A stretch of DNA of 64,000 bases, from IMG/VR virus record IMGVR_UViG_3300032287_003113, positions 155,880-219,879 of that record. One strand, 5' to 3'. Made by a program: the position numbers and the translations under genes. This document shows, one piece after another, positions 1-31,587 of the stretch (positions are counted from its first letter, which is position 1; the number at the start of each line of letters is the position of its first letter). Below the pieces are notes generated by a model, which worked only from the letters and a program-made list of their open reading frames with translations, searched no databases and was not told where the DNA came from.

Positions 1-34
1 TTACTGACAAAACAATTTACACGAGAAATTACCT

Positions 35-1081
35 ATGTTGAATAGCGAATACCATGTTGGTATCAACGACAACAAGTTTTGGCGTAAAGACTTGTTAGTT
101 ATGCACCTGTACGATTGCTTAAACACCAACCAACAGCCAGCCCTGCGGGTAACTCCAGAAGGTTCAAGCCTTGCAGGCTGTGGTTTATATAGGTACTTGG
201 ATGCGTTTTGCAAACATACTGGATACGATAAAAAGAACATTAGCATACGCACAGGCAACATGATCGAACAACACCCTGAGTACACAATTATAAAAGATGC
301 CACCGCTTGGTTCGAAGTTCCTATTATGCAACAATGGGCACAAAAAAATCCGATCAACACAGGCACCATGCCTAGATTACACTTTGGACACTTTGTTGGA
401 AAAAGCAATTGGAATAGATTGTGGATTGGTGCTGTGTTGCACAGTAAATACAATGATAAGTTATTTCAAACATATAACACCGGCATTGGTACACACTATC
501 TTACTAAGAATGACGGCCTTTGTGATTTTGTGGGCTTAGAAGATCTGGTCAAAATGGAATGTGATCAAATTGATGTGGCTGTCGAATTTTTAAAGTCTTG
601 TCCAAAGTTTATACCTGAGGACATAGAAGCAATTAAAAATATGTCAACTTACATCAAACAAGACGATTACTACCCTATACAATTACCAGCCAATCTTAAC
701 ATATTGAAATACTATAACAATATATTTGTGGACATTATCCATGAAACATTTGTTCGTGATGAAGTATGTTTTGCTACAGAAAAAACTTGGAGAACAATGT
801 TAGCACGTAGGCCTTTTATTACCATGGGAGGCAGAAATCATTTGGCTAATTTAAAGCGTCTAGGATTCCGTACATTCAATGACATCTGGGATGAAGGTTA
901 CGACGAGTATGGTATGCAGTGGCGTGTTAAAGAAATACTAAAACTAATAGATACTATCAGTTCTTGGTCAGTGGAAAAGATACAACAGGTCTTACAAGAT
1001 ATGCAACCTATACTAGAACACAACTATCAAACTTTTATGACACTAACACATCAAAAAATACAGCGAACATTCAATGACTAA
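35..1081 (+). CDS. GT10 (alpha-1,3-fucosyltransferase)-like glycosyltransferase domain protein
   Basis: C-terminal FVDIIHET...FATEKTWR...PFITMG...LKRLGFRTF...WDEGYD resembles the GT10 E..Y/F.TEK donor motif region; paralogous to 15338..16516. Confidence 0.45.
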   Translation: MLNSEYHVGINDNKFWRKDLLVMHLYDCLNTNQQPALRVTPEGSSLAGCGLYRYLDAFCKHTGYDKKNISIRTGNMIEQHPEYTIIKDATAWFEVPIMQQWAQKNPINTGTMPRLHFGHFVGKSNWNRLWIGAVLHSKYNDKLFQTYNTGIGTHYLTKNDGLCDFVGLEDLVKMECDQIDVAVEFLKSCPKFIPEDIEAIKNMSTYIKQDDYYPIQLPANLNILKYYNNIFVDIIHETFVRDEVCFATEKTWRTMLARRPFITMGGRNHLANLKRLGFRTFNDIWDEGYDEYGMQWRVKEILKLIDTISSWSVEKIQQVLQDMQPILEHNYQTFMTLTHQKIQRTFND

Positions 1082-11188: not shown

Positions 11189-11255
11189 ACTAGAATTACG
11201 CTATCGCAAGAAGTTAAAAGAGCTTCGTAAACGAGATCCATTTATCTATAAATGA
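11154..11255 (+). CDS. Small basic protein MNWLRNIYNRIKLELRYRKKLKELRKRDPFIYK (33 aa; below ORF-track cutoff)
   Basis: AAGGA SD at 11142-11146, ATG 11154, TGA overlaps next ATG (ATGA); fills the gap 11188-11252. Confidence 0.7.
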   Translation: MNWLRNIYNRIKLELRYRKKLKELRKRDPFIYK

Positions 11256-11896
11256 TTTATTGTATCGGAGACAGTTTTACCTACGGGGAAGAACTTGCTG
11301 ACCGTAATACAGCATGGCCGGCAATATTGGGTAAAAAATTAAATCAACCTGTGACCAATTGGGGCAAACCAGCAACTGGAAACCATCGCATGGTCAAGCG
11401 TACAATGGATGCTGTATTTGCGGGTGCTTCGTTGATTGTCGTTGGTTGGTCAGATCCAGCTAGACAAGAGTTTGCTGATGATATCAGTATTACTGACTTA
11501 TGGGCAGGTAGGGATTATCGTAGAATGCAAACCTGTACTGATCATCGACGTGATTTAATCAAGTATATGACAGCGTATGACGTTCCGGGATATTACTACG
11601 CACAGTGGATACGACAAATCGTTTTAACACAGACTTTTTGTCGTGCAAATGCCGTTCCTTGTGTGATGTTTAGTGCGTGTAATGCTGAAAGTTGGAATAT
11701 TGATTATATAAAAAAACAAAGTCAACACGAGCATTTAACGCGACACGTAGATGTAGACACATACATTGGTTGGCCATATTCAGGATCAACGGAATGGACA
11801 TATGGTACACCGCATGGCCCGGGCGGTCATCCTCTGGAACAGGGTCATGAGATTATAGCAGAAAAAATTTATGAGCATATTAGCCGTCGGGTGTAG
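11252..11896 (+). CDS. SGNH/GDSL-like hydrolase or acyltransferase
   Basis: IGDSFT, GKPATGN, C-terminal GGHPLEQGH. Confidence 0.55.
   Translation: MIYCIGDSFTYGEELADRNTAWPAILGKKLNQPVTNWGKPATGNHRMVKRTMDAVFAGASLIVVGWSDPARQEFADDISITDLWAGRDYRRMQTCTDHRRDLIKYMTAYDVPGYYYAQWIRQIVLTQTFCRANAVPCVMFSACNAESWNIDYIKKQSQHEHLTRHVDVDTYIGWPYSGSTEWTYGTPHGPGGHPLEQGHEIIAEKIYEHISRRV
11855..11883 (+). repeat. 29-nt dual-coding junction repeat, copy 1
   Basis: ATAGCAGAAAAAATTTATGAGCATATTAG; 27/29 identical to 12471..12499. Confidence 0.85.
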
Positions 11897-12521
11897 TTTT
11901 ACAGCAGGTGCAGAATTACCCAATCCTGCAGAATCTGCTTGGCCCAACCTAATAGGAAAATTAAATAATCGTCCAGTAAAAAATTTGGGACTTGGCGGCG
12001 CATCCAATGATCGTACATTTAGATTGGTTATAGAGGAAACTGCTCAACAACGATTTGATTTGGTTGTTATACAGTGGACTGAACCTAGTCGTATGGAAAT
12101 ATGGAATGCCCGCCGCCGCAATACCATGGATGTAAATATAGGAAAGTTGCATTCAAACATGTTTGAGATGTCTTGGCTCGATACTTACTATTGCAATCAC
12201 TACGATGATTTCCACGCTCATCGTAAATGGGCCGCACAGATATTGTCCTTGCAAGGATATTTAAAATCAATCGATCAGCCCTATGTTATGGTCAGTTTAA
12301 ATGGACTTGATCAAAGACTTTACACGGGTGCATGGAGTAGTGTAAAATACTTGTGGGACGGTGTTGACACCATGCATTACCCAGGTTGGCCGTTTGAGGG
12401 AATTTATATGTGGCAAGGTGATTGTCCTAGAGCTCCCGGCGGGCATCCATTGGAGCTGGGACACAAAAGAATAGCAGAAAAAATAAATGAGCATATTAGG
12501 AATCTCGGCTGGCTTCCATGA
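11871..12521 (+). CDS. SGNH/GDSL-like hydrolase or acyltransferase (tandem paralog of 11252..11896)
   Basis: VGCSFT, GLGGASN, C-terminal GGHPLELGH. Confidence 0.55.
   Translation: MSILAVGCSFTAGAELPNPAESAWPNLIGKLNNRPVKNLGLGGASNDRTFRLVIEETAQQRFDLVVIQWTEPSRMEIWNARRRNTMDVNIGKLHSNMFEMSWLDTYYCNHYDDFHAHRKWAAQILSLQGYLKSIDQPYVMVSLNGLDQRLYTGAWSSVKYLWDGVDTMHYPGWPFEGIYMWQGDCPRAPGGHPLELGHKRIAEKINEHIRNLGWLP
12471..12499 (+). repeat. 29-nt dual-coding junction repeat, copy 2
   Basis: ATAGCAGAAAAAATAAATGAGCATATTAG. Confidence 0.85.
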
Positions 12522-13968
12522 CGCCGCCATTTCGTTAATTAACTCCGATGGAGAAATAGTATTTGCTGGGCATTCAGAACGCTACAGCAAACGTAAGAAC
12601 GATCCAAATCTTTGTATTAGCCTATTAGAAGAGATATGCGATTACCCCATTGATACTATCGCATACTATGAACGACCCTGGAACAAACAATTACGTCAAT
12701 TGTACAGTGGGCAAGGAATAGAGTGGAACAAACTTTTTGTTAAACAAATTGTTCGGGATCAATTGCATGGCTGGTTGGCGCATCCTCCTAAAAACATAAA
12801 AACTTATAATCATCATTTGAGTCACGCCGCAGCAGGATTCCAAACAAGTGTGTTTGACAAAGCCACAGTGGTAGTAATTGATGCCATTGGGGAATGGGAC
12901 ACTATTAGTATTTGGGGTGCTCACTATGTGGATGGTCAGGCCAAATATCACAGACTGTGGGGACAGCGGTATCCACATAGTGTTGGACTGTTTTATTCAG
13001 CAATGACTCAGCGTGTGGGACTAAAACCCAACGAAGAAGAGTACATATTAATGGGCATGAGTGCATATGGCAAAGATAATGTTGCTGACGTTATAAAAAA
13101 TGCTGTAATTAACAATGAGTGGGATTTGACTTTTAAACAAAATTTACACACTGGCGTTGACACGGAGTTTTTACGTGGAATCTCAGACATGGATATTGCC
13201 ACATCTAGCCAGGCTTTTACAGAAAATCTGATATATAATGTTATGCGTCGAGCCAAAGACTTTGGCTGGAGCAGAAATTTGGTTTACATGGGCGGAGTTG
13301 CCCTAAATTGTTTAGCTAATCGTAATCTTGGTGATTATTTTGAAAAAATTTGGATCATGCCTAATCCTGGTGACGCTGGTAGCAGTCTTGGCGCCGCTGC
13401 CCTTGCCTACGGTAAAAGAATTGACTTCAACAACGCATACCTTGGTCACTGCATTAGCGGCGACTATCCCGTCAATGCCATCCTTGATTGTTTACTCCAC
13501 GATAAAATCGTTGGAGTTGCTTCCGGCCGAGCCGAATTTGGACCTCGTGCCCTTGGGAACAGAAGTCTCCTCGCCGATCCGCGTGGATCAGATATAAAAG
13601 ATCGTGTCAACCAAATCAAACGTCGTCAAAAGTTTAGGCCATTTGCGCCGGTTATCTTGGCTGAGCAAGCTGAGTTATTTTTTGATATGCCCCGTGGTTT
13701 CAGTGATAGTCCATATATGCAGTCAGTCGCCCATTGCCGGCATCCTGACACTTACCCTGCTATTGTGCATCACGACGGCACTAGCCGAGTACAAACGGTT
13801 ACAGATAATGGCTCAGGCATTAGAGAACTCCTAGAAAAATGGTATGTAATGACCGGCTGTCCCATGTTGCTCAACACCAGTCTCAACATTAGAGGTGAAC
13901 CCATGGTCAACGATCGTGCCGACGCAGATAGATTTGAACACTTATATGGAGTACGTGTATGCTCGTGA
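12487..13968 (+). CDS. Carbamoyltransferase, NodU/CmcH family
   Basis: GISAGFHDAA, ERYSKRK, HHLSHAA, DAIGE, GGVALNC, GDAGSSLGAA, EFGPRALGNRS, RPFAP, LNTSLN. Confidence 0.9.
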   Translation: MSILGISAGFHDAAISLINSDGEIVFAGHSERYSKRKNDPNLCISLLEEICDYPIDTIAYYERPWNKQLRQLYSGQGIEWNKLFVKQIVRDQLHGWLAHPPKNIKTYNHHLSHAAAGFQTSVFDKATVVVIDAIGEWDTISIWGAHYVDGQAKYHRLWGQRYPHSVGLFYSAMTQRVGLKPNEEEYILMGMSAYGKDNVADVIKNAVINNEWDLTFKQNLHTGVDTEFLRGISDMDIATSSQAFTENLIYNVMRRAKDFGWSRNLVYMGGVALNCLANRNLGDYFEKIWIMPNPGDAGSSLGAAALAYGKRIDFNNAYLGHCISGDYPVNAILDCLLHDKIVGVASGRAEFGPRALGNRSLLADPRGSDIKDRVNQIKRRQKFRPFAPVILAEQAELFFDMPRGFSDSPYMQSVAHCRHPDTYPAIVHHDGTSRVQTVTDNGSGIRELLEKWYVMTGCPMLLNTSLNIRGEPMVNDRADADRFEHLYGVRVCS

Positions 13969-14501
13969 AAATTACAGAAAACTTTTATCAACTCATTGAC
14001 GTATTTAACCCCAATTTATATCAACATTTAGCAAACGCTTTTAACCAAGATCGGTCCGCCTGGGCACAAATAAGTGACGAGAGCACAGATGTAAAACGTC
14101 AACAGCTAAGTTTATCTGTTAACGATTACCTTGGACAACAGATCAATGAAGAATTAAGAAAATATGTTAGAACAGCCGAGCCACGTGTTGGACCACTGTA
14201 TCAAAACGGTCCACAACTATGGTATGACAACAACGGTTATATCAACACCATACATGATGGTGATGTCAGTCCCAATCATTGTGTTAACGTACAAGTGTAT
14301 CTCAGTGATGGAGATGAACGTATGGGAACCTGTTGCTATGACGAAGGCGAATGGCACAGCGTACCGTATCGAGCCAACTCAGGATACATGCTGATAGGTC
14401 CTACTCGTATACCGCATGGTATGCAACATCCAGTAACCAATCACAGAATGAGTTTATATCAGGGATTTAGAAACACCGAAGTACCGTCAGATATTTGGTA
14501 A
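13959..14501 (+). CDS. 2OG-Fe(II) oxygenase-like protein
   Basis: IHDGD...VQVYL...PYRANSGY...PHG pattern typical of the DSBH fold; first motif is an atypical HxxD. Confidence 0.45.
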   Translation: MLVKITENFYQLIDVFNPNLYQHLANAFNQDRSAWAQISDESTDVKRQQLSLSVNDYLGQQINEELRKYVRTAEPRVGPLYQNGPQLWYDNNGYINTIHDGDVSPNHCVNVQVYLSDGDERMGTCCYDEGEWHSVPYRANSGYMLIGPTRIPHGMQHPVTNHRMSLYQGFRNTEVPSDIW

Positions 14502-14512
14502 AGGAAAACAAA

Positions 14513-15352
14513 ATGACACAACGTATTTTAATTATGGGCCTGCCGGGTGCAGGTAAAACAACCTTGGCTGGTGCTCTTAAAAAGTATTTGGAACAGTACG
14601 GAACAATGAGTATGTATTCTGCTGAACAACTTCCAGTAACCGGGTTTGATGCTAAGGTAACTTGGTTTAATGCTGACGATATTCGTCGTAAGTACAACGA
14701 CTGGGATTTTAGCAATGAAGGACGCATCCGCCAAAGCCTACGTATGTTTCAGTTTAGTATAGAAGCCGGTGGAGAATATGTGATCTGTGACTTTGTTGCA
14801 CCGCTAGTAGAAATGCGTAACAACTTCAAAGCTGATTGGACCATTTGGGTAGATACTATACGTGAAGGTCGTTATGCTGACACCAATGCGGCCTTTGTTG
14901 AGCCTGACGTGTATGACTTCCGTGTCACAGAACAAAACGCAGAAAAATGGGCTGAGTTTATTGGATCGCATATTATTGATAATCGCCGCAGGCCCACGTT
15001 TGATTGGCGGAAAGAAACTGTACAAATGTTAGGACGTTGGCAACCTTGGCACGATGGACACCGTGCTTTGTTTGAGCGTCTAATACAACGCACAGGACAA
15101 GTAGTCATACAAATACGTGACGTACAAGGTTGGCAAGGATCAAATCCATTTGAAGTAGAAAAGGTTAAAGGCTTTATTCGTCGCGACCTAGATCCAATCT
15201 ATCAAGGACAATATGAAATACAAGTGGTACCTAATATTGTACACATTGGTTGGGGTCGTGGAGTAGGATATACCAGTGGTGAAGAAACATTTGATGAAGC
15301 TGTCACAGACATCAGTGCCACAAAGATTCGTCGAGAACTAGGACTCAAGTGA
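14513..15352 (+). CDS. Adenylylsulfate kinase-like P-loop kinase fused to an HxGH nucleotidyltransferase domain
   Basis: GLPGAGKT Walker A, NADDIR, DFSNEGRIRQ, DFVAP; C-terminal GRWQPWHDGH; start moved to ATG 14513 (AAGGA SD). Confidence 0.7.
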   Translation: MTQRILIMGLPGAGKTTLAGALKKYLEQYGTMSMYSAEQLPVTGFDAKVTWFNADDIRRKYNDWDFSNEGRIRQSLRMFQFSIEAGGEYVICDFVAPLVEMRNNFKADWTIWVDTIREGRYADTNAAFVEPDVYDFRVTEQNAEKWAEFIGSHIIDNRRRPTFDWRKETVQMLGRWQPWHDGHRALFERLIQRTGQVVIQIRDVQGWQGSNPFEVEKVKGFIRRDLDPIYQGQYEIQVVPNIVHIGWGRGVGYTSGEETFDEAVTDISATKIRRELGLK

Positions 15353-16516
15353 GATAGGTATAGGCAAGCCAGTTCTGACATCTAGGCGATATGGGGGTAT
15401 GCGTTGAAACGCACGATCTATCGCTGTAATAGACCGAATCAAATGATCCCATTCACGCTTGATAAACGCCGGATCATTAAATAATTGATAGTTGTGTTCT
15501 AAGACGGGTTGCATGTCTAGCAACATGGTCATTTGTTGTTCTGTGCTTAATTCGCTAACAGTTTTTATTACTTGAGCAATAGCTTCAATACGTATTACAG
15601 GATCTTCTATTGCATCGTAACTTTCATCCCAGTAGTCACCAAATGTACGAAAGCCATAACTACGCAAATACTCTAAGTTATGGGCACAACCAGCAAGTAC
15701 GAATGGCATACGAAGTACAATAGGTTTAAATATCTTTTCTGTCAAGTGTGTTTTTGTTTGAAAGAAACAGGTTTCCGTTACCAAGAATACAAAACTTTTC
15801 ATCAACTCAGTCATAGGACTTAACAACATACTTTGATTGGGAATGTTTTGTCCAGCAAAATCTATACGCAACTCTGGTATCTGTTTTATGTTAGCAATGG
15901 CCTCGTTGATGTATGCTGGATCAAATTCATATTCGGGAACACCTCGGCGTAGGTTATCATCAAACGCACCGTCGTCGGGGCAATGGTGACTGTAACTTAC
16001 ATATCCTGAATCAAGCAAATTGTTTTTGTATAATTCGTTTACCAACAGGCTACGATAGATACGACGGTTACTGGTCAGTCGATTAAAAGATATATAAGTT
16101 TTTTCTAAGGTACGTTCGTGTGGTAGTTGTAAACCAGGAAGCATTTGGTGTCCTCGGAACCAATCGTGGGCAGCAAAAATATGAAAGAAGTAATTGATAT
16201 GCAGGAATGGAAATTCTTCACAGATGCGTTTGGCTTCGTCACTGTCACGTTCAGTGGATACAAGAATAAATGGTTTTTGCTCAAGACCGGTGATGGCTTC
16301 AAACACAGGACGATTGTAATCTAAATCCAACGGCTCTTGATCATAAAAGATAAACAATGGCCCGCGAAATTTACCTGCATCTTCGTCATTGCGTCGAAAT
16401 TCAAGATTTTCTGGTAGAGTTGATCCAAAAGGATGTAGGTAAACTACCCTGGGATCTGTTATAATAGTTTGTAGGTGTTGGAATATATTTTCGTAATGAC
16501 TGGATAAGTTATACAT
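15338..16516 (-). CDS. GT10-like glycosyltransferase domain protein
   Basis: FLVTET...LTEKIFKPI...PF...LRSYGFRTF..YWDESYD; paralog of 35..1081. Confidence 0.45.
   Translation of the reverse strand: MYNLSSHYENIFQHLQTIITDPRVVYLHPFGSTLPENLEFRRNDEDAGKFRGPLFIFYDQEPLDLDYNRPVFEAITGLEQKPFILVSTERDSDEAKRICEEFPFLHINYFFHIFAAHDWFRGHQMLPGLQLPHERTLEKTYISFNRLTSNRRIYRSLLVNELYKNNLLDSGYVSYSHHCPDDGAFDDNLRRGVPEYEFDPAYINEAIANIKQIPELRIDFAGQNIPNQSMLLSPMTELMKSFVFLVTETCFFQTKTHLTEKIFKPIVLRMPFVLAGCAHNLEYLRSYGFRTFGDYWDESYDAIEDPVIRIEAIAQVIKTVSELSTEQQMTMLLDMQPVLEHNYQLFNDPAFIKREWDHLIRSITAIDRAFQRIPPYRLDVRTGLPIPISLES
16457..16465 (+). promoter_or_regulatory. Extended -10 promoter candidate (TGnTATAAT) for 16515..18347, inside the antisense gene
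   Basis: TGTTATAAT 50 nt upstream of the ATG; no -35 at 17 bp. Confidence 0.35.
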
Positions 16517-18347
16517 GTTTGATGTTTTTTACTTTGGCGATAAACCGGGCTTGTTTGCTTTTGAACAACCTGCGACTAGTCTCAAAGATGCCGCTGATAA
16601 ATGTAAGACTACACACTACTGGTATATTTATGGGGGCAATGATTACACCGGCTTCGACTTTGAATACGTACCGGTACCTTGGGAAACCACGCACTTGCAT
16701 GTATGGCCTAGCCAGCATCAACGCAATGGCGAAGTGTATCTAGCCAATCGACGTACAGCACACAATCAAGAATGGCACTTCCATACAGAACAGAGTGTTG
16801 TCCGTAAGCCCGATCGCGGCATATGGCGTGTACCCGACAACATAGACGACACAGACTTTGATTATTCATGGCATCCTGATCGTACCGAACCTGACTACGA
16901 ATATCGATTTCCCACACAGTGGCAACGTGAAGGTGGTCCTGTGTATCCAGGCTCAGCCGGCGTCAAGTACATGACTGACCAACGCATACGTGCAGGCGCC
17001 ACACAAATATTCTACATGGACTTTATGAATGGTGGTATAGCACGTCATCAATTTGATTTGTTAAAATTAGATCACCCTGATATCAAGCGAACAAGATATG
17101 TGGACAACCACCTCAACGTGTTCAAGCGTATTATGAACATGGCCACCACAGAATACGTATGGATCATCAGTAGCATCTGCGACTATACGCAATTTGATTT
17201 TACCTGGCACCCCAGCGAAGCACAGCGTGAAATGATCCACTGCTTTCCCACAGGCAACCAACGACGTGGCGACACATTTTACATACACGTTCCCAGTTTC
17301 ACTCGGCAGATGTTTGAGTTAGAGCTGTTGGATTGGTTCAATGTTATCAACTACTCAGATGATCAACAGGTAGAACGTTTTGGTATGCCGGTACACCAAT
17401 ACTCAACCGACGATCTAGTAACCGAAATCAAAAACTACAAGTTCGAAACTCCCTATGTGATGTTCACTAATCAAAAGGACCTGGTGTTACATGATAGCCC
17501 TTGTTTATGGACCAAGAAAGACCGTACAGTGGTTCGTATTAGCACAGCAGGTGCTACTGCGATAGTGCCTCGAGATATCAAGGAGGATTTACGCACACAA
17601 ATCTACGATTATCCTTACATTGAGGACACGAAACCCAGGTTAAACGACTACTTAGGAGGCCGTGATTGTCTCGACATAGTCTATATCAGCAACGGTGAAC
17701 CGGACGAAGAACGTTGGTATGATCATCTGTGCTATATGAGCAATACCCGAGCAAAATGGGTTAGAGGAGTTGATGGTAGAACAGCCGCTTATCAAGAAGC
17801 TGCACGTCAAAGTTCTACACCCTGGTTTTTTGCTGTGTTTGCCAAATTAGAAGTGTTGGGCAATCAGTTTCCTTGGGACTCCTGGTTACCAGACTACTTC
17901 CAAGAGCCCAAACATTATATTTTTAATAGTCGTAATCCTGTAAACGGCTTAGAGTATGGGCACCAAGGTGTCATTGCTTACAACAAGCGATTGGTGTTAG
18001 AGAATAACGCACCTGGCATAGACTTTACACTAAGCCAACCACACGAAAGTGTTCCTATCCTGTCAGGTACAGCACACTACAATCAAAGTGAGTGGATGAC
18101 TTGGCGTACCGCTTTCCGTGAAGTGGTCAAACTACGACACTTTATGGACATACAACCTACTGTGGAAACAGAACATAGACTCGCGACATGGTTGACGGTT
18201 GCCGAAGGTGATTTTGCTGAGTGGAGTATACGTGGCGCAGAAGATGCTGTGGCTTACTATACAGAAGTTGGCGGAGACTACGAACAGTTAAAACTCAGCT
18301 TTGAATGGGCTTGGCTAAGAGAACGATTTAATTCAAGTAAGCCGTAA
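16515..18347 (+). CDS. Glycosyltransferase-A-like protein with three degenerate internal repeats
   Basis: Repeated units D(V/I)FY...A..(C/A/S).T..(Y/V/F)W/F...D(Y/F)..FDF.(Y/W).P; last unit DIVYISNGE..VRGVDG..AAYQEAA; DxD replaced by FAK. Confidence 0.45.
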   Translation: MFDVFYFGDKPGLFAFEQPATSLKDAADKCKTTHYWYIYGGNDYTGFDFEYVPVPWETTHLHVWPSQHQRNGEVYLANRRTAHNQEWHFHTEQSVVRKPDRGIWRVPDNIDDTDFDYSWHPDRTEPDYEYRFPTQWQREGGPVYPGSAGVKYMTDQRIRAGATQIFYMDFMNGGIARHQFDLLKLDHPDIKRTRYVDNHLNVFKRIMNMATTEYVWIISSICDYTQFDFTWHPSEAQREMIHCFPTGNQRRGDTFYIHVPSFTRQMFELELLDWFNVINYSDDQQVERFGMPVHQYSTDDLVTEIKNYKFETPYVMFTNQKDLVLHDSPCLWTKKDRTVVRISTAGATAIVPRDIKEDLRTQIYDYPYIEDTKPRLNDYLGGRDCLDIVYISNGEPDEERWYDHLCYMSNTRAKWVRGVDGRTAAYQEAARQSSTPWFFAVFAKLEVLGNQFPWDSWLPDYFQEPKHYIFNSRNPVNGLEYGHQGVIAYNKRLVLENNAPGIDFTLSQPHESVPILSGTAHYNQSEWMTWRTAFREVVKLRHFMDIQPTVETEHRLATWLTVAEGDFAEWSIRGAEDAVAYYTEVGGDYEQLKLSFEWAWLRERFNSSKP

Positions 18348-24417: not shown

Positions 24418-24599
24418 TATTCTACTCCAAAATGTTTTAAAATATTGTCACTGCTCTGATAAGGTTCGGCGGTGTGTGCAATATCAGCACACTCCCGCAC
24501 AATGGCCTGGGCAAACTCTTCAACCTTGAGTCGCCATATGGGGCTATGAGCAATGGTAAAGTGAGTGTCCTCGGCTATGCGTTGGATATTTTCGTTCAT
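24417..24599 (-). CDS. Hypothetical protein (60 aa)
   Basis: Start moved to ATG 24599, which overlaps the upstream TGA (ATGA). Confidence 0.55.
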   Translation of the reverse strand: MNENIQRIAEDTHFTIAHSPIWRLKVEEFAQAIVRECADIAHTAEPYQSSDNILKHFGVE

Positions 24600-25840
24600 T
24601 TCACAGCATCTTCGTAGTGGGCATACACACCAAACTCGGGTTTGGCTTCTTTGTTGCCTTTGATAATCCACACAGTATCGCAATACTGCTCGACCTGATC
24701 AGGGCTCCAACCAAAGAAACAAAAGTCAGTAAACATGATCAATTTCTTGGGTTCGATGTTGTTTTCTTCCAACCAGGTCCAAACACAATGCGGATCTGTA
24801 CCACCGCCACCACCCGGTACAAAGCTCTCAATGTCAGCGATATTGTCCGATGTGAATATTTCGTGATTGTGTACTTCGGTATCCCAACCCAACACATGGA
24901 TACGATATTCGTCGTAACTTTCCATGATACCTTTGATTTCACTCAAGAAAATCTTGAGATCTGGGTCAGTGATACTACCTGAAGTATCAATACCAATCAC
25001 AACATCAATCTGGTTGCCGGGCAACATGCCGGGCATGACAGCATCCATATGCCACCCTCTGCGGCTGGGACGTTGCCAAGTAAAATCACTCTTGATAGAA
25101 CTTTCAACCTGCTGATTGATCAACTCACGCCAGTTAATCACAGGTTCGGTTAGGTCCTTGATCATGCGTTTGACACCACCGGGCAAATTACCTGCACCCG
25201 AAGCATTGGCGGCATTTAGTACTGCATCTTTGATTTCGTCGCGAATAGCCTTCTTTTCTTCTTCGCTCAGGCGTGGACGACCGTTGCCTGGCTTGTCGCC
25301 ATCTTCGCCTTCACCACCTTCTCCGTCCAAATGTTCGTCTAGTAGACGCTTCATCAATTCATCAATGTTGATTTTGTCGGCATTGGCATACAAGTCATCA
25401 TACACTTCTTCGGCACTCATACCTTTGTACTTCGAGTCGTACAGGGCAACGGGAATCTTGTCGCCAATACGTTGTTCTACCAGGTCCCAGTTTACGCAAT
25501 AGTCATCGGCAATGTTCCACAGTTTTGGATCTCTGTTGCCACGACGTCCCATATGGTCATAAACCGCATGAAGCACTTCATGTCCGACCAAGAATTCCAA
25601 TTGCTTTAGGGGAAGGTTATTGACAAACTCTGAATTATAGTAAAATTTACGGCCGTCTGTGGCGGCAGTAGGACACCATTCATCTGCGTTGATAAGTGTT
25701 AGGCGGGTAGCAAGGTTGCCAAAGAATGGAGCACGGAGCAAAAGACCAATACGTGCGGTAACCAGTTTTTCGCGGGCACTTGCATCCGTCTTGGGATCTG
25801 TTACTGTTACCGCTTTACTTTTTTCTGCTAGTGTAGTCAT
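24596..25840 (-). CDS. HExxH metallopeptidase-like domain plus C-terminal VWA domain protein (DUF2201-type MoxR partner)
   Basis: TAATDG..FYYN, GHEVLH, N.ADDY.VN; VWA MIDAS IDTSGS...GGGT; start ATG 25840 with AGGAG SD. Confidence 0.85.
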   Translation of the reverse strand: MTTLAEKSKAVTVTDPKTDASAREKLVTARIGLLLRAPFFGNLATRLTLINADEWCPTAATDGRKFYYNSEFVNNLPLKQLEFLVGHEVLHAVYDHMGRRGNRDPKLWNIADDYCVNWDLVEQRIGDKIPVALYDSKYKGMSAEEVYDDLYANADKINIDELMKRLLDEHLDGEGGEGEDGDKPGNGRPRLSEEEKKAIRDEIKDAVLNAANASGAGNLPGGVKRMIKDLTEPVINWRELINQQVESSIKSDFTWQRPSRRGWHMDAVMPGMLPGNQIDVVIGIDTSGSITDPDLKIFLSEIKGIMESYDEYRIHVLGWDTEVHNHEIFTSDNIADIESFVPGGGGGTDPHCVWTWLEENNIEPKKLIMFTDFCFFGWSPDQVEQYCDTVWIIKGNKEAKPEFGVYAHYEDAVK

Positions 25841-25864
25841 TCTGTTCGCTCCTGTATTATATAT

Positions 25865-25893
25865 ATTATACATTTAATTGATTTTTTGGTCAA
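25865..25893 (-). promoter_or_regulatory. Sigma70-type promoter, conserved-spacer family
   Basis: TTGACC-17-TATAAT with extended TG; spacer AAAAAATCAATTAAATG. Confidence 0.8.
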
Positions 25894-26419: not shown

Positions 26420-27526
26420 TTACTTACCGCCTGCCGCGATAATGTACTTGCCGTACCGCTTATGGAACTCATCAAAGTTCTTGAGCTTGCCTGGTACCAA
26501 GGGTAAGTTGTACGTGGTCAACGCAACTCTAGCACCCATAACAACCAATTCAGTGGTAAAGTTATCCATCATAAAGCGGAAGAAGTTATCGGCCATACCG
26601 TGCCATTGGCTGATCTTTTCCTTGCCTAGTTTGGCATAAGCATCTTGCAATTCATAGCACATGGACACAGTCAAGGAGTACATGGCACTGACTTCTTTGA
26701 CATCTAAAGTCTTGACCTTGCCTGCCAAGATTTCGCTTGGGTTAGGCATCTTGCTGGCAACCTTGCGGTGTGCCATAAACTTAACTGCCAAGCCATCACC
26801 GATAGTACCAGCAATCAAGTCCGACAATTCTGCATCTGTGGCATCTTCGTCATGTAAGAATTCACTTACAAAGTGCCATGAACGTGGTGTTGCAAAGGCA
26901 CGGCTGGCTGAGCGTGGGTTAAAATCCATCAAGTCTTGCTTGGCAAAACCAATGTAACCTACCACGTCCTTGTGCTCACGATTCTGCACAGCCCACTCGT
27001 TCCATGAGTCGTAATCAGCACGTACTTCCAAATGTACGAAACGATTTGCCAGGGGCATTGGCATACGGAAACTAACACCTTTGTCGCTTTCACGATTACC
27101 CGCGGCCACAATTACCACATTCTTGGGCAGGTGATACTTGCCTAGTCTGCGATTGAGAATCAACTGATAGGCCGCGGCCTGTACTGCCGGGGCTGCCACG
27201 TTCATTTCGTCCAAGAACAAGGTCACAACAGGATATTCTGCGGCCAACTCTGGTGTTGGTAAATCCACAGGTTCAGCCCAGTCCATTTTGCCCGACTCTT
27301 TGTTATAAAACGGAATACCACGCAGATCTGTGGGCTCCATCTGGCCTAGACGTAAGTCAATGGTATAACCGCCTAATTCTTGGGTAAGACCGGCTACCAA
27401 TTCACTTTTACCTACTCCGGGAGGACCCCAAATAAAAACAGGGCGTTGGACTTTGAATGCACGAAGCAAGCGGCTACGGCATTCATTGGGTGTTACTGTA
27501 CGGCTTTCACTAATAGTTGTACTCAT
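26420..27526 (-). CDS. MoxR-family AAA+ ATPase
   Basis: WGPPGVGKS Walker A, LFLDEMN Walker B, AAGNR, LANRF, PRSW; AGGAG SD. Confidence 0.9.
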   Translation of the reverse strand: MSTTISESRTVTPNECRSRLLRAFKVQRPVFIWGPPGVGKSELVAGLTQELGGYTIDLRLGQMEPTDLRGIPFYNKESGKMDWAEPVDLPTPELAAEYPVVTLFLDEMNVAAPAVQAAAYQLILNRRLGKYHLPKNVVIVAAGNRESDKGVSFRMPMPLANRFVHLEVRADYDSWNEWAVQNREHKDVVGYIGFAKQDLMDFNPRSASRAFATPRSWHFVSEFLHDEDATDAELSDLIAGTIGDGLAVKFMAHRKVASKMPNPSEILAGKVKTLDVKEVSAMYSLTVSMCYELQDAYAKLGKEKISQWHGMADNFFRFMMDNFTTELVVMGARVALTTYNLPLVPGKLKNFDEFHKRYGKYIIAAGGK

Positions 27527-27570
27527 CACAGGCTCCTAAAAATTACTACAAAATTAACTACTATAGAACT

Positions 27571-28611: not shown

Positions 28612-29670
28612 TTATTGAGATTTTTTACCCATATATTCGTGGCTATAACACACCCTATAAGCATCGCGAACAGTGGTTGTGCCGCCATAGCCCGCCATTT
28701 TTCTAGCAGTACCGTCTTTGTTTAAGTAACTACCTATCCTAGACTTCTTGTTCATTGATGTGGGGCGCCACAGGTCTGACTTTTCTCTGTGTTCACCAAA
28801 GCTAGGGTGTGCAGTCTTACTAAAGTACCTTAGCCCACGGCTCACATATATTTCAGCAACGGCATCGCTAAACGCTGTGCCTATACCCATGCCCTGAAAC
28901 TCGGGAAGGATTACTGTACGATGACCACGCCAGTACGAATGAATATCTCTGTTGGTTGAATGTATTGCGGCATGGAAGCCAATGGGCTTGTCGCCTAACA
29001 GTAACACATAGTAATGAGCACTCTTACTGATTGCAGTATCTAGATAGTGATACCGACTGAAATATCTCCAATAGTCGACACTTGAGCTTTTGATGGTGAG
29101 TGCAAGTTGTGGTCTTGTCCCCAGTCGAAAGGGTGACCTCCGGTTTTCTAAGACACAGAGATCTGTGTCATATACGTAGTCTGGATCTAACCATTCTACT
29201 ATGTCTCGATGGCAACTGGCAATGTATAACGGATTGGTACTGCTTTGACGATCGTAAAACTTGCGAATACTCAATGCAAGACTCTTAGCAGTATCACGGT
29301 CCACAACACTTGTAAACTCATCTACTGCGGTTAATCCTTGGTCTAGACTTATGGCCATTTCAAAGCGATGATATTCGCCGTTGCTCAATGTTGCAGGTGC
29401 TCGGAACCAAGCGGGTATGCTACGCAGGCCACAGGCCAGTAACAACTCTTCTCCACGTTCAGGTGTGGTAAAGTTCTCTATTGTGTTAAGAGTATTATCT
29501 ACTACAGGTTGTTGAAGTTTGCCTAAGCTACGTAGGATAGTACTCTTGCCACTGCCTGACGTACCTACAATTAATACAATACCATCCGTTGGAAGCTCGG
29601 GTATTGCTACCTGTGACTCTTTATAGTCTGTGATGTCGTACTTGCGTTTAATTTCTTCTAAGTAGCTCAT
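28612..29670 (-). CDS. ABC-type ATPase fused to a C-terminal GNAT acetyltransferase-like domain
   Basis: GTSGSGKS, LSNGE..R signature, VDEFTS Walker B; C-terminal RTVILPEFQGMGIG acetyl-CoA motif A. Confidence 0.8.
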   Translation of the reverse strand: MSYLEEIKRKYDITDYKESQVAIPELPTDGIVLIVGTSGSGKSTILRSLGKLQQPVVDNTLNTIENFTTPERGEELLLACGLRSIPAWFRAPATLSNGEYHRFEMAISLDQGLTAVDEFTSVVDRDTAKSLALSIRKFYDRQSSTNPLYIASCHRDIVEWLDPDYVYDTDLCVLENRRSPFRLGTRPQLALTIKSSSVDYWRYFSRYHYLDTAISKSAHYYVLLLGDKPIGFHAAIHSTNRDIHSYWRGHRTVILPEFQGMGIGTAFSDAVAEIYVSRGLRYFSKTAHPSFGEHREKSDLWRPTSMNKKSRIGSYLNKDGTARKMAGYGGTTTVRDAYRVCYSHEYMGKKSQ

Positions 29671-30875
29671 GCTATTTCAAATACAGCAGGATTTAAATCG
29701 TTGATAGTTTTTTTATTTTTCTTAGGTACAGGCAACACCGGTTTAGTAAAAGTTTTTCCAAGAGAATCAGCACAAACAACATTTGATGCAGGAACACCGG
29801 GTAATCTTTTTAAAGCAGAATCTACATTAGATTGAGTTAAATCAATTCCGTATATGGTGTCCACAGGAATATTATTTGCTAATTTTCTTTTTTGTATTGC
29901 TACCAAAAACTGACCGTCACCACACATAGAATCTATAAAAGTATTATCTGGATTTGTAAATGCAGTAGGATCGTATTGTTCAATGACGTTTAATACTTCT
30001 TCTACTAAACTTGTTGGAGTAAACACTTCGCCTAATGCTTTAACACGGTCTCGATCTTCCGTAATATCATTATCTAATACTTTAGGAGCCGTCAAATCTT
30101 GCGGTGTAATATTCCATTCTTTAGGAGTTTCTAATCCCGTAACAATTTGATTAATATCAAATTTTTTAACATTACGCATACCAAATGCATGGCCGCGTAG
30201 TTTCATACGTTTAACATATTCCTTAAAAACAGGATTCTTTTCTACAAATAATTTTAATTTTTCTGCTTCGGCAATAGTAGCAGTTGGTATGTAGCAGATA
30301 GTCCCACCATATACTGCTTCATCTGTGACCGTATAACTTTTACGACTTTCCATTGTATAAAAGGCAAATTTAGGACCTGCGTCAATTTTGACGTCGGTAT
30401 AATCATATGCAACTTGATCTCTACCTTTACCGGGCAACTGTCTAATTACTTTATTCTTTTTACCTGCACCAAAAAACTTATTCATGCCATTGTTACTGCC
30501 ACTGTAATAAACAAAGTCAAAACAATCTGCAGGGTTGGGACTGTAAATCTTTGCAGCCATGCCACCTAATATTACAGGCGGGGTCGTGCGTGGAAGTTTG
30601 CTTACACTAAAGAAACAGGTGTTATACGGCCATACATCAAGATTGTCCATTAAATGAATAAAGTTAACTTGATAGTCTTTAAAGTACCCGTTGACCAAGT
30701 CTGGGATAATGCCTTTGAGGGTAATATTAACTAATGTACCAGAGTCGGCAACACGATTATCAAAATCGTTGCGTGTGGCTGTTTTATAAAGAGTGGTGTT
30801 TCCGCCAGTGCCGGCAATGTTATTACCTTCGGCTACATTGAACGCTGGGTTACTAATTGCATAATTAAATTGCAT
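29667..30875 (-). CDS. N6-adenine DNA methyltransferase-like protein, circularly permuted
   Basis: N-terminal FNYAISNPAF (motif IV-like); C-terminal GEVFTP (X), FIDSMCGDGQFL (I), IYGIDL (II), CADSL (III). Confidence 0.75.
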   Translation of the reverse strand: MQFNYAISNPAFNVAEGNNIAGTGGNTTLYKTATRNDFDNRVADSGTLVNITLKGIIPDLVNGYFKDYQVNFIHLMDNLDVWPYNTCFFSVSKLPRTTPPVILGGMAAKIYSPNPADCFDFVYYSGSNNGMNKFFGAGKKNKVIRQLPGKGRDQVAYDYTDVKIDAGPKFAFYTMESRKSYTVTDEAVYGGTICYIPTATIAEAEKLKLFVEKNPVFKEYVKRMKLRGHAFGMRNVKKFDINQIVTGLETPKEWNITPQDLTAPKVLDNDITEDRDRVKALGEVFTPTSLVEEVLNVIEQYDPTAFTNPDNTFIDSMCGDGQFLVAIQKRKLANNIPVDTIYGIDLTQSNVDSALKRLPGVPASNVVCADSLGKTFTKPVLPVPKKNKKTINDLNPAVFEIA

Positions 30876-31587
30876 TTGACATTTTCTTAAAGATTTCTTT
30901 TAATTCTTCTGTGGACTTTAAATATTTAGTCTGCCAAGATTTATATAATTCAGGTTCTGTTTTAGAATTAAAATTCCACCCAATTTGGTCTTGTCTTTTT
31001 TTATCTAAGTTTTCTTGAAGAATTGCTAATCTAGTAGCAGTATCACCTTTAATTTTTCCGGACCCTTGACTTGATCCGATGGCCTCGTAAAATTTAGGTT
31101 TGCCAGATTTTTTATCAATTTTGTAAGGGGTAATAGCACGTTGACGAATTTCATCGATTAGTTCGTCTTTGGTGAGATAAAAATATTCTACTTTAGTATT
31201 ATCCCATGCCTTCATAAACAAGTAACCAGCCAAATCTTCGTAAAAGCGTAATTGCCCACCACCAATTGCATCACCGGATGAAAACGATACCTTAAGTTCA
31301 ATATTATTTTTTCCTGGTACCAACATTTCTCCTGCAACTAAGTCGCCTAAGTCAAGACCTTCTTCGTCATTCTTTTTATCATAACTTAACGCATCTTTTT
31401 TCTTAGTACCAGTTTGGTGTGCTACCCAGCCCTCAATAAATTTTTCAGCTGATTTTTGTTTCATAGCACCATAATACTCGTACATTTCTGAATATGGTGT
31501 AATGTAATAATTTTCAATATTTTCTAATAGTTCTTGTATTTCTTTGCGTTCTTTATTGCTGGCTTTAATTCGATCAAGTAACGACAT
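30865..31587 (-). CDS. Putative PD-(D/E)xK restriction endonuclease-like protein
   Basis: EKFIE...LGD...NIELKVS; directly upstream of the MTase in an AT-rich cassette. Confidence 0.45.
   Translation of the reverse strand: MSLLDRIKASNKERKEIQELLENIENYYITPYSEMYEYYGAMKQKSAEKFIEGWVAHQTGTKKKDALSYDKKNDEEGLDLGDLVAGEMLVPGKNNIELKVSFSSGDAIGGGQLRFYEDLAGYLFMKAWDNTKVEYFYLTKDELIDEIRQRAITPYKIDKKSGKPKFYEAIGSSQGSGKIKGDTATRLAILQENLDKKRQDQIGWNFNSKTEPELYKSWQTKYLKSTEELKEIFKKMSNAI

What the first reader, a model, noticed from the sequence alone, without database searches (positions are those of the whole stretch)
29667..30875. Circularly permuted gamma-type N6-adenine methyltransferase
Gamma-class MTases run X-I-II-III-IV...VIII-TRD. 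Here the catalytic half (NPAF, LY, motif VI strand, motif VIII) is N-terminal, and GEVFTP/DSMCGDGQFL/GIDL/CADSL (X-I-II-III) sit at the C-terminus after the presumed TRD. Gamma-family motifs thus appear in beta-like order, a natural permutant of the kind gene-duplication models predict. NPAF in place of NPPY is also unusual.
Basis: partly seen in the sequence, partly recalled or inferred. Interest (0 to 1): 0.65.

Follow-up and report, generated by a model that had tools for sequence, protein, structure and literature searches.

The report
Circularly permuted TaqI-like phage DNA methyltransferase
A jumbo phage gene encodes a DNA adenine methyltransferase whose two halves are joined in the reverse of the usual order, and relatives with normal, split and swapped layouts show how such rearrangements arise.

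Summary
Window 29667-30875 (-) is one 402-aa ORF. It starts with the motif IV strand (MQFNYAISNPAF). It ends with motifs X, I, II and III (GEVFTP, DSMCGDGQFL, GIDL, CADSL).

When the C-terminal 140 aa are placed in front of the N-terminal 262 aa, the protein aligns as one HMMER domain with about 370-400-aa relatives (E 1e-53). Those relatives have the normal gamma order and carry Pfam N6_Mtase and Eco57I.

By fold, the whole model resembles beta-class enzymes (M1.MboII Z 9.4). Residues 1-245 match M.TaqI residues 97-410. So the sequence is gamma-type and the topology is beta-type.

The fused layout is conserved in more than 260 metagenomic homologues. The family also has split gene pairs in the permuted order, and a tree indicates more than one origin of the fused permuted form. 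NPAF occurs only in the window's own clade.

A conserved, overlapping upstream gene has a PD-(D/E)xK nuclease-like fold, which suggests a phage restriction-modification pair.

Activity is untested. A permuted M.EcoKI-like methylase in jumbo phages was noted in one sentence in 2021, so novelty is moderate.

The parts
29667..30875 (-). Whole ORF, 402 aa (P0001): circularly permuted TaqI/Eco57I-like (gamma-family) SAM-dependent methyltransferase
30585..30875 (-). aa 1 to about 97: catalytic half of the Rossmann fold. It holds the motif IV strand and loop, a helix and the following strands. The boundary with the TRD is approximate.
   Evidence: AF2 secondary structure. Homology to the motif IV region of canonical relatives with Pfam Eco57I.
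30840..30851 (-). Motif IV, NPAF (aa 9-12). Invariant in the window's clade; NPPF/NPPY in the rest of the family.
30090..30584 (-). aa about 98-262: presumed target-recognition domain. In canonical-order relatives this part forms the C-terminus.
   Evidence: Model residues 1-245 align to M.TaqI 97-410 (Z 6-6.7, 216-218 residues aligned, rmsd 6.6-6.7). Canonical relatives end at the position equivalent to aa 262.
30051..30089 (-). aa 263-275: linker joining the old C-terminus to the old N-terminus
   Evidence: part of the low-pLDDT block at about aa 271-283
29751..30050 (-). aa 276-375: AdoMet-binding half. Motif X GEVFTP (30015-30032), motif I DSMCGDGQFL (29904-29933), motif II GIDL (29838-29849), motif III CADSL (29760-29774).
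   Evidence: Pfam N6_Mtase 19.8 bits (cut-off 20.4), aa 278-349 to profile 22-88. HsdM 2okc and M.BseCI 7qw5 alignments. PADLOC MTase_II. Coordinates.
29670..29750 (-). aa 376-402: variable, low-confidence C-terminal tail. It occupies the place of the loop that leads into motif IV in canonical enzymes.
30865..31587 (-). Upstream 240-aa gene, overlapping the MTase start by 11 nt: PD-(D/E)xK nuclease-like protein, a candidate restriction endonuclease partner
   Evidence: Directly upstream of the MTase in 10 of 14 related viral loci. Invariant E52, D79, D82 and L98-K99, with E97 replaced by D in one sequence. AF2 pLDDT 85.6. Best structural matches are restriction endonucleases, all below Z 8.

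Best explanation
The ORF encodes a SAM-dependent DNA N6-adenine methyltransferase of the TaqI/Eco57I/HsdM ('gamma') sequence family. Its polypeptide is circularly permuted between motifs III and IV.

The chain starts at the motif IV strand (FNYAISNPAF). It continues through the rest of the catalytic half and a TaqI-type target-recognition domain (aa 1-262). A short linker follows. The chain ends with the AdoMet-binding half (motifs X, I, II, III; aa about 276-375). The two halves are inferred to fold back into one Rossmann domain by pairing the motif IV strand with the motif I strand, which gives a beta-class chain topology.

NPAF keeps the Asn and the aromatic residue that hold the flipped adenine, so the enzyme is expected to be active. 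In the jumbo phage it most likely methylates phage DNA at a short specific site. It is probably the modification partner of the PD-(D/E)xK nuclease-like gene that overlaps its start, or it may protect against host restriction.

In evolutionary terms it is a fusion of a 'catalytic + TRD' gene with a downstream 'SAM-binding' gene. Such split pairs, in that order, still exist in related phages.

Shown: the permutation, the homology and the conservation. Inferred: methyl transfer to DNA adenine, the restriction-modification pairing and the order of evolutionary events.
For: - ORF and motifs.
- C-terminal block matches X-I-II-III of gamma MTases.
- A profile search of 1.84 billion proteins finds many 360-400-aa relatives in which profile positions 1-262 match their residues about 105-370. 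Their N-termini match the window protein's C-terminal part. They carry Pfam N6_Mtase and Eco57I.
- The re-ordered sequence aligns as one domain across the junction (E 1e-53 to P0131; also P0128, P0139).
- The fused layout and all motifs are conserved in 263 word-search hits (the 120 listed are 70-92% identical over 93-100% of the query) and in 14 IMG/VR loci.
- AF2 model: pLDDT 76, pTM 0.77.
- Foldseek best hits are CamA, M.BseCI, BrxX/PglX, M.TaqI and MmeI.
- VIA-align: beta-class MTases over model 1..360-379 (M1.MboII Z 9.4, rmsd 4.3, 157 aligned). M.TaqI matches 1..245 to 97..410 (Z 6.7).
- Split pairs in permuted order: L023, L026, L029 and Synechococcus phage S-CAM7 gp056/gp057.
- Predicted complex of the L026 halves: score 0.83, best control 0.00. 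The mark was reached by 51 of 78 solved complexes and 2 of 108 mismatched pairs. Runs agree in at least 78% of contacts and partner pLDDT is at least 81. The interface pairs the motif IV strand with the motif I strand.
- Tree: the window's clade is 100* supported and nested among canonical-order proteins.
- Nuclease-like neighbour.
Against: - No experiment shows activity or target.
- The protein's own Pfam hit (19.8 bits) is just under the gathering score (20.4). Its N-terminal 262 aa hit no Pfam model directly, so homology rests on intermediate relatives.
- The AdoMet-binding half of the AF2 model has only pLDDT about 50-67.
- NPAF is not a documented active motif IV. No paper in the held library links NPAF with a methyltransferase.
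- The nuclease assignment rests on moderate scores (best Z 7.0; Foldseek E >= 0.1) and a motif. The nuclease gene is absent next to the MTase in 4 of 14 related loci.
- The 220-kb record shows no other amino-MTase, and the host is unknown.
Confidence: 0.75

Rival explanations
1. It methylates RNA, protein or a small molecule rather than DNA. NPPY-type gamma-like enzymes include HemK/PrmC and rRNA and tRNA m6A methyltransferases.
For: Source annotations of some relatives read 'predicted RNA methylase' and 'tRNA1(Val) A37 N6-methylase TrmN6'. Pfam UPF0020/RMKL-like and MTS also hit the canonical relatives. No target site is known.
Against: The best structural matches are DNA MTases, including their DNA-recognition domains: M.TaqI 97-410, CamA 157-568, M.BseCI 125-578 and PglX. 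Relatives sit in DNA-methylase islands with Dam-like and N6_N4_Mtase genes, or next to restriction-type helicase genes. The conserved neighbour looks like a restriction nuclease. The source names are automatic.
Confidence: 0.1
2. It is a catalytically dead methyltransferase-like protein. The Pro-to-Ala change in motif IV would have inactivated it, and it would be kept as a DNA- or SAM-binding factor, for example a specificity or regulatory partner of the neighbouring nuclease.
For: NPAF departs from the (D/N/S)PP(Y/F/W) consensus and is confined to this clade. No report of NPAF in a methyltransferase was found.
Against: Asn9, Pro10 and Phe12 are invariant, as are Phe285, Thr286 and Pro287 of motif X and Asp315, Gly319 and Gly321 of motif I, across relatives that share 69-90% identity with the window protein. 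By the cited description of the mechanism, the substituted position contributes backbone rather than side-chain contacts (PMC4738411). Dead paralogues such as METTL14 typically lose several motif residues.
Confidence: 0.1
3. It is an ordinary, ancient beta-class methyltransferase (N6_N4_Mtase lineage), and the gamma-like motifs are convergent.
For: The full-length structural matches are beta-class enzymes (M1.MboII, M.RsrI, CcrM, EcoP15I Mod, M.PvuII; Z 7.5-9.4). The motif order is beta.
Against: No hit to PF01555 in the protein or in the record. Motif X is GEVFTP and motif IV is N-P-x-F, both gamma-type. Sequence homology runs end to end with canonical-order gamma relatives after re-ordering. 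The TRD matches M.TaqI's.
Confidence: 0.03
4. The fused ORF is an assembly or gene-calling artefact that joins two separate genes.
For: Split versions of both halves exist as separate genes elsewhere.
Against: The same fused ORF occurs in 14 independent IMG/VR contigs and in hundreds of metagenomic clusters from JGI, ENA, Logan and NCBI. The linker region is conserved.
Confidence: 0.02

Closest known systems
M.TaqI / Eco57I-type gamma-class N6-adenine DNA methyltransferases (Pfam PF07669 Eco57I, PF02384 N6_Mtase; also CamA, M.BseCI, PglX/BrxX)
   Same: Sequence family of both halves: motif X GxxxTP, motif I DxxCGxGxFL, motif III xxDSL, motif IV N-P-x-F. The TRD follows the catalytic half and matches M.TaqI 97-410. 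Probable monomeric base-flipping m6A chemistry.
   Different: The chain order is IV...TRD-X-I-II-III instead of X-I-II-III-IV...TRD. Motif IV is NPAF, not NPPY/NPPF. No direct Pfam hit on the catalytic half.
Beta-class amino-methyltransferases (M1.MboII, M.RsrI, CcrM, EcoP15I Mod, M.PvuII; Pfam PF01555)
   Same: [quoted passage not shown] Best full-length structural superpositions (Z 7.5-9.4).
   Different: No sequence membership in PF01555. Motif IV starts with N, not D/S. The TRD is TaqI-like. The permutation here is recent and traceable to canonical-order sisters, whereas the origin of the beta class is ancient and debated (PMC7544214).
[quoted passage not shown] 2021, PMC7824862)
   Same: Same idea, in the same kind of phage. 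The window's DNA polymerase is nearest to Sinorhizobium phage Phosso and Agrobacterium phage Atu_ph07, and that paper places Atu_ph07 in group 2.2.
   Different: That paper gives one sentence and no anatomy. I could not verify whether its example protein belongs to this family. Split intermediates, recurrence and the NPAF clade are not described there.
Naturally split or permuted cytosine methyltransferases (M.AquI and M.EcoHK31I two-subunit enzymes; M.BssHII zeta class; plant DRM2) and engineered circular permutants (PMC7544214, references 2 and 3). The M.AquI and M.EcoHK31I examples are from my own knowledge.
   Same: The Rossmann MTase fold tolerates breaking and re-joining. Split halves reassemble.
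   Different: Those are C5-cytosine enzymes with other breakpoints. Here the break lies between motifs III and IV of an N6-adenine enzyme, and one family shows canonical, split and permuted states side by side.

Membership tests
Gamma-class (TaqI/Eco57I/HsdM-like) N6-adenine MTases | AdoMet-binding region with motifs X, I, II, III homologous to PF02384/PF07669 members | tested here: met
   Pfam N6_Mtase aa 278-349 to profile 22-88, 19.8 bits against cut-off 20.4, so marginal on its own. Family profile against HsdM 2okc 121-250 and M.BseCI 10-93. PADLOC MTase_II E 2e-5. About a third of the listed close homologues carry a precomputed PF02384 hit.
Gamma-class (TaqI/Eco57I/HsdM-like) N6-adenine MTases | Catalytic region with motif IV NPP(Y/F), homologous to the Eco57I/TaqI catalytic half | tested here: met
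   Homology shown through relatives: aa 1-262 align with residues about 105-370 of proteins that hit PF07669 across motif IV. The window's own motif is NPAF, a variant.
Gamma-class (TaqI/Eco57I/HsdM-like) N6-adenine MTases | Linear order X-I-II-III-IV-...-VIII-TRD | tested here: not met
   The order is IV...TRD-X-I-II-III. It is therefore a permuted derivative of the family, not a gamma-class enzyme in the Malone sense.
Gamma-class (TaqI/Eco57I/HsdM-like) N6-adenine MTases | TRD directly after the catalytic half, TaqI-like | tested here: inconclusive
   Model 1..245 aligns to M.TaqI 97..410 with Z 6.0-6.7, rmsd 6.6-7.2 and 214-222 residues aligned. This is suggestive but below Z 8.
Gamma-class (TaqI/Eco57I/HsdM-like) N6-adenine MTases | Forms N6-methyladenine in DNA at a specific site | not testable with these tools
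   Needs expression and methylome mapping.
Beta-class amino-MTases (PF01555 N6_N4_Mtase) | [quoted passage not shown] | tested here: met
   full-length structural matches to M1.MboII, M.RsrI, CcrM, EcoP15I Mod and M.PvuII
Beta-class amino-MTases (PF01555 N6_N4_Mtase) | Sequence membership in PF01555 with a DPPY/SPPY-type motif IV | tested here: not met
   No PF01555 hit at E <= 1 and none in the record. Motif IV is NPAF.
Beta-class amino-MTases (PF01555 N6_N4_Mtase) | Obligate dimer with the TRD facing away from its own active site (PMC7544214) | not tested
   No homodimer prediction was run. A TaqI-like TRD argues for a monomer, by inference.
Type II restriction-modification system | Adjacent endonuclease gene with a PD-(D/E)xK active site | tested here: inconclusive
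   The 240-aa neighbour has invariant D82 and L98-K99, with E97 replaced by D in one sequence. Its fold matches NhoI (Z 7.0), 3ndh (6.0), PvuII (5.7), MspI (5.6) and DpnI (4.7). The Atlas gives the Bsp6I REase family at TM 0.48/0.56. There is no HMM hit.
Type II restriction-modification system | Endonuclease and methyltransferase share one recognition sequence, and methylation blocks cleavage | not testable with these tools
   Needs biochemistry.

The most novel reading that the evidence does not exclude
The family may be a modular, two-piece methyltransferase system. Phage 'methylase islands' would encode several different catalytic + TRD halves and a single shared SAM-binding half that can pair with any of them, giving several specificities from one cofactor module. 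The window's protein would be one such pair frozen by fusion in the gene order catalytic-half then SAM-half. It would serve as the modification arm of a phage-borne restriction-modification module together with the upstream nuclease. The family would then record live, repeatedly, the route by which beta-order enzymes arise from gamma-order ones.
Probability: 0.3. Interest if true: 0.7.

Novelty: new variant of a known kind. Interest (0 to 1): 0.5.

Why it matters
The alpha, beta and gamma classes of amino-methyltransferases have been explained by circular permutation since the 1990s. That explanation rests on ancient, unresolvable splits.

Here one young phage family holds canonical-order proteins, split gene pairs, arrays of halves and fused permuted proteins. 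These states share 30-60% identity, and the breakpoint is marked by a conserved internal Met. The permutation pathway can therefore be tested directly by reconstitution and swapping experiments.

There are practical consequences too:
- The catalytic half escapes Pfam, and PHROGs lists the family as 'unknown function'. Permuted and split phage methyltransferases are therefore under-annotated. Examples are a hypothetical protein in Aeromonas phage avDM6 and gp057 of Synechococcus phage S-CAM7. Phage methylome predictions are affected as a result.
- The natural break point is a ready-made design for split methyltransferase tools.

Tried and rejected
- Megablast of the 4-kb region against 50,697 GenBank phage records found no match.
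- tblastn of the protein there found only C-terminal (SAM-half) matches in 5 records.
- The search for related loci with the diverse catalytic-half alignment failed because no stretch was conserved enough. With P0130 it returned only short motif IV matches. With P0131 it returned nothing.
- The look-up of encoding contigs: P0130 is not on record. P0125 and P0142 lie on contigs under 1 kb, so their partner genes could not be seen. The apparent stand-alone SAM half P0134 starts at a contig end and is probably a fragment. Many of the 66 'C-part only' hits may therefore be fragments and were not counted as split genes.
- Pfam PF07669, PF01555 and PF02086 gave no hit anywhere in the 220-kb record.
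- Pfam ThaI (PF15514), suggested by the Atlas feature search, gave no HMM hit.
- A PDB sequence search with the nuclease family profile gave only chance hits.
- Bujnicki 2002 could not be read. What I say of it comes from PMC7544214 and the bioRxiv classification paper and from my own knowledge.
- The look-up of sequencing runs found DNA holders only, partly freshwater or lake metagenomes, and no RNA run.
- Rejected ideas: an artefactual fusion, an ancient beta-class member, and a hidden upstream in-frame SAM-binding exon. The last is excluded because the ORF begins at the first start codon after a stop.
Full report
**1. The object.** Window 29667-30875 (minus strand) is a single 402-aa ORF, P0001, read from the first start codon after a stop. 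It overlaps the stop of the upstream 240-aa gene (30865-31587) by 11 nt. It overlaps the start of a downstream ATPase-GNAT gene (28612-29670) by 4 nt.

The window is the last 64 kb of a 219,879-bp IMG/VR viral record that CheckV rates about 51% complete. Its family-B DNA polymerase is closest to Sinorhizobium phage Phosso (52% identity) and Agrobacterium phage Atu_ph07 (47%), which have genomes of 470-490 kb. This is therefore a fragment of a jumbo phage. Runs that hold parts of the stretch are partly labelled freshwater or lake metagenomes, and none is RNA.

**2.
- NPAF at aa 9-12
- GEVFTP at aa 282-287
- DSMCGDGQFL at aa 315-324
- GIDL at aa 343-346
- CADSL at aa 368-372

The C-terminal block matches the N-terminal part of gamma-type models in every library tried:
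- Pfam N6_Mtase: profile 22-88, 19.8 bits against a cut-off of 20.4.
- PADLOC MTase_II and type IIG models.
- NCBIfam Alw26I-type methylase, positions 1-66.
- PDB sequences: StySJI HsdM 121-250 and M.BseCI 10-93.

In the HsdM alignment, GQYFTP, DPACGTGGFL, GVD and VCEDSL line up with the window's motifs. No library recognised the N-terminal 270 aa directly. That is why I used the one large profile search.

**3. Proof of the permutation.** I searched 1.84 billion representative proteins with a profile of the family and found 2,260 proteins at E <= 0.001.
- Beyond a few full-length permuted clusters, dozens of 360-400-aa proteins match profile positions 1-262 with their residues about 105-370.
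- With the window protein cut in two, its first 262 aa match the C-terminal two thirds of these proteins. Its last 140 aa match their first 100 aa.
- These relatives hit Pfam N6_Mtase at their N-terminus and Eco57I across motif IV. They are ordinary gamma-order enzymes.
- When I re-ordered P0001 as aa 263-402 + aa 1-262, HMMER aligned it as one domain running straight across the junction. The matches were P0131 (query 10-401, target 17-383, E 1e-53), P0128 and P0139.
- At the junction, the window's '...CADSLGKTF...EIA|MQFNYAISNPAFNVAEG..AGTGGNTTLYK' lies over P0131's '...VADYLGVDI...EYNMEFDAVVGNPPFNIHDG..QGTGGNVNLYK'.
- Canonical proteins end where aa 262 of P0001 lies.

The protein is thus an exact head-to-tail permutant, broken between motif III and the motif IV strand.

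**4. Structure.** The AF2 model has pLDDT 76 and pTM 0.77. It is weaker (50-67) in the SAM-binding half.
- Foldseek ranks CamA, M.BseCI, BrxX/PglX, M.TaqI and MmeI first. All are gamma-family enzymes. TM-scores are low, as expected for a permutant.
- The order-dependent VIA aligner splits the evidence cleanly.
  - Over the whole chain (model 1..360-379) the best matches are beta-class enzymes: M1.MboII (Z 9.4, rmsd 4.3, 157 aligned), M1.HpyAVI, M.RsrI, M.BceJIV, CcrM, EcoP15I Mod and M.PvuII.
  - M.TaqI aligns only with model 1..245, to its residues 97..410 (Z 6.0-6.7). That is the stretch from motif IV through the TRD.
  - M.BseCI (125..578), CamA (157..568) and PglX (501..935) behave likewise.

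The sequence family is gamma and the chain topology is beta.

**5. Conservation.** The word-index search found 263 relatives. The 120 listed share 70-92% identity over 93-100% of the query.
- In a 22-sequence alignment, N9, P10, A11, F12, N13, the loop AGTGGN.TLYKTATRNDF, F285-T286-P287 of motif X, and D315, G319 and G321 of motif I are invariant.
- Fourteen IMG/VR loci carry the same fused ORF.
- An artefactual or decaying fusion is therefore excluded.
- NPAF is restricted to the window's clade (7 permuted proteins plus 1 stand-alone). Of the 52 canonical-order proteins in the tree set, 46 have NPPF or NPPY. The three other fused permuted proteins have NPPF.
- As described in PMC4738411, the target amino group is held by the Asn side chain and a backbone carbonyl between the following residues. 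A Pro-to-Ala change at the third position should therefore be tolerated. That is an inference.
- No paper in the held library mentions NPAF together with a methyltransferase.

**6. How the permutation arose.** The family exists in several states.

(a) Canonical fused proteins.

(b) Stand-alone catalytic + TRD proteins of about 255-300 aa that begin exactly at the motif IV strand (MKFDxVxGNPP[FY]). Their stop codons lie inside the contigs.

(c) Split pairs in the permuted order:
- L026: a 299-aa catalytic half, then a 145-aa SAM half overlapping it by 4 nt.
- L023: a 276-aa half, then a 147-aa half 7 nt downstream.
- L029: a 267-aa half, then the SAM half.
- Cultured Synechococcus phage S-CAM7: gp056 (348 aa, annotated 'DNA methyltransferase'), then gp057 (133 aa, 'hypothetical'), beside a 'restriction subunit' gene.
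- Sources.

(d) A split pair in canonical order with an unrelated beta-class MTase gene in between (L024/L025).

(e) Fused permuted proteins, including a 386-aa 'hypothetical protein' of cultured Aeromonas phage avDM6.

Other observations bear on the route:
- In L023 and L029, two or three catalytic halves precede a single SAM half.
- In 35 of 51 canonical proteins a Met sits eight residues before the motif IV Asn. This is exactly where split and permuted proteins start.
- A complex prediction for the L026 halves scored 0.83, with a best control of 0.00. The mark was reached by 51 of 78 solved complexes and 2 of 108 mismatched pairs. Runs agree in at least 78% of contacts and partner pLDDT is at least 81. 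The closest contacts join residues 38-43 of the catalytic half (the motif IV strand) to residues 53-58 of the SAM half (the motif I strand). This is the central junction of the Rossmann sheet. The model supports binding but does not show it.

A maximum-likelihood tree of 94 catalytic + TRD regions gave these results:
- The window protein sits in a 100*-supported clade of eight permuted proteins and one stand-alone protein, nested among canonical ones.
- Two other permuted proteins (P0132, P0133) sit in other clades.
- Stand-alone forms are scattered, needing 21 changes.

Holding all permuted forms together costs 127 log-likelihood units (p-AU 0.0003). Two caveats apply. I named the group after seeing the tree, and P0133 is a long branch.

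I read this as frequent fission and fusion at one hinge, with fusion in the order 'catalytic half then SAM half' happening more than once. This is compatible with the tandem-duplication model (Jeltsch 1999, cited in PMC7544214), because arrays of halves look like decayed tandem copies. The order of events is not resolved.

**7. What it does.** I infer a DNA N6-adenine methyltransferase for these reasons:
- All cofactor and catalytic motifs are kept.
- The recognition domain resembles that of TaqI-type DNA enzymes.
- Relatives lie in islands with Dam-like and N6_N4_Mtase genes, or next to restriction-type helicases.

The 240-aa gene lies directly upstream of the MTase in 10 of 14 related loci. 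Its family keeps E52, D79, G81, D82, N95, L98 and K99, with E97 replaced by D in one sequence. That pattern is a PD...(D/E)xK signature.

The evidence on its fold:
- Its AF2 model has pLDDT 85.6.
- Against 48,161 PDB representatives the model matches almost only nucleases of that fold:

| Match | Z |
|---|---|
| NhoI | 7.0 |
| I-Ssp6803I | 6.6 |
| 3ndh, a restriction endonuclease-DNA complex | 6.0 |
| Eco15I N-terminal domain | 5.7 |
| PvuII | 5.7 |
| MspI | 5.6 |
| Hjc | 5.5 |
| DpnI | 4.7 |

- The ESM Atlas gives a Bsp6I-family restriction enzyme cluster (TM 0.48/0.56).
- The feature search gives a ThaI-family cluster (0.92).
- All Z values are below 8 and no HMM hit exists.

A phage restriction-modification pair is therefore my favoured reading but remains unproven. 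A homing endonuclease or a resolvase-like nuclease is not excluded. The ATPase-GNAT gene downstream accompanies the MTase only in the three closest loci.

**8. What is known.** Permutation among MTase classes is textbook material (Malone 1995, Jeltsch 1999 and Bujnicki 2002, as summarised in PMC7544214 and in bioRxiv 10.1101/2023.12.13.571470).
- The recent topology classification ties NPPF/NPPY to topology A and DPPY/SPPF to topology B. It does not describe a gamma-sequence family with B order.
- Iyer et al. [quoted passage not shown] I could not check whether that is this family.
- PHROGs files the permuted architecture under 'unknown function' (phrog_11371, phrog_4376).

I therefore rate it a new variant of a known kind. 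The principle is known and was probably glimpsed before. The anatomy, the NPAF clade, the split intermediates, the arrays, the recurrence and the nuclease partner appear undescribed.

**9. Limits.**
- No activity, target site, host or expression data are available.
- Homology of the catalytic half rests on intermediate sequences.
- The tree used the quick search and has a long-branched outgroup.
- Many 'SAM half only' hits are probably contig-end fragments.

Noticed in passing
window 30865-31587 (-): 240-aa protein with no Pfam or PHROG hit. It has an invariant D82 and L98-K99 signature (E97 is D in one sequence) and a fold matching restriction endonucleases (NhoI, 3ndh, PvuII, MspI, DpnI) and other PD-(D/E)xK nucleases. 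It overlaps the MTase start and is syntenic in 10 of 14 related loci. Possibly the R gene of a phage restriction-modification pair.
   Followed up: yes
window 28612-29670 (-): 352-aa fusion of an ABC/AAA-type P-loop ATPase (aa about 25-140) with a GNAT acetyltransferase (aa about 210-285). It matches phrog_11143 ('unknown function') end to end and overlaps the MTase stop by 4 nt. It is syntenic only in the three closest loci. The ATPase + GNAT combination recalls nucleic-acid acetyltransferases such as TmcA (from my own knowledge; untested).
   Followed up: partly
L023:3997-7282, L029:819-2875, L028:4001-8996: Phage 'methylase islands' in which two or three Eco57I-type catalytic + TRD half-genes stand in tandem before a single SAM-binding half-gene (L023, L029), or beside an 1148-aa ResIII-helicase/Eco57I fusion (L028). 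This suggests that one cofactor module is shared by several specificity modules.
   Followed up: partly
L031 (Synechococcus phage S-CAM7, NC_031927.1 42777-44221) and L030 (Aeromonas phage avDM6, OP380601.1 808-1968): Published phage genomes carry unrecognised members. S-CAM7 gp057 ('hypothetical', 133 aa) is the SAM-binding half that completes gp056 ('DNA methyltransferase'). The avDM6 386-aa 'hypothetical protein' is a fused permuted MTase, with MNPPY near its N-terminus and EVFTP / DPACGDG near its C-terminus.
   Followed up: partly
canonical-order relatives, e.g. P0131 residue 128, P0138 residue 112: 35 of 51 canonical-order proteins keep a Met eight residues before the motif IV Asn, exactly at the permutation and split point. 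It may be a relic of a gene start or an internal translation start.
   Followed up: partly
P0152, P0177, P0183, P0191, P0230 (1127-1244 aa): Large proteins in which the same catalytic + TRD module is the C-terminal about 260 aa. It lies behind a ResIII-type helicase region in P0152, and behind a SAM half at 863-955 in P0191. These are helicase-methyltransferase fusions of the family.
   Followed up: no
window 1-18347 (+): A run of about 17 co-oriented genes, including a radical-SAM-like protein (2788-4170) and a Nol-like carbamoyltransferase (12487-13968). It looks like a biosynthetic or modification gene cluster in the phage.
   Followed up: no
window 24596-25873 (-) and 26420-27529 (-): A 425-aa HNH endonuclease family protein (phrog_1314) and a CobS/MoxR-like AAA ATPase (phrog_1297) lie just downstream of the MTase operon.
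   Followed up: no
L002 (P0125, 261 aa): A stand-alone NPAF catalytic half inside the otherwise fused permuted clade. The 99 nt after its stop do not encode the SAM half, so its partner is elsewhere or lost. The contig is too short to tell.
   Followed up: partly
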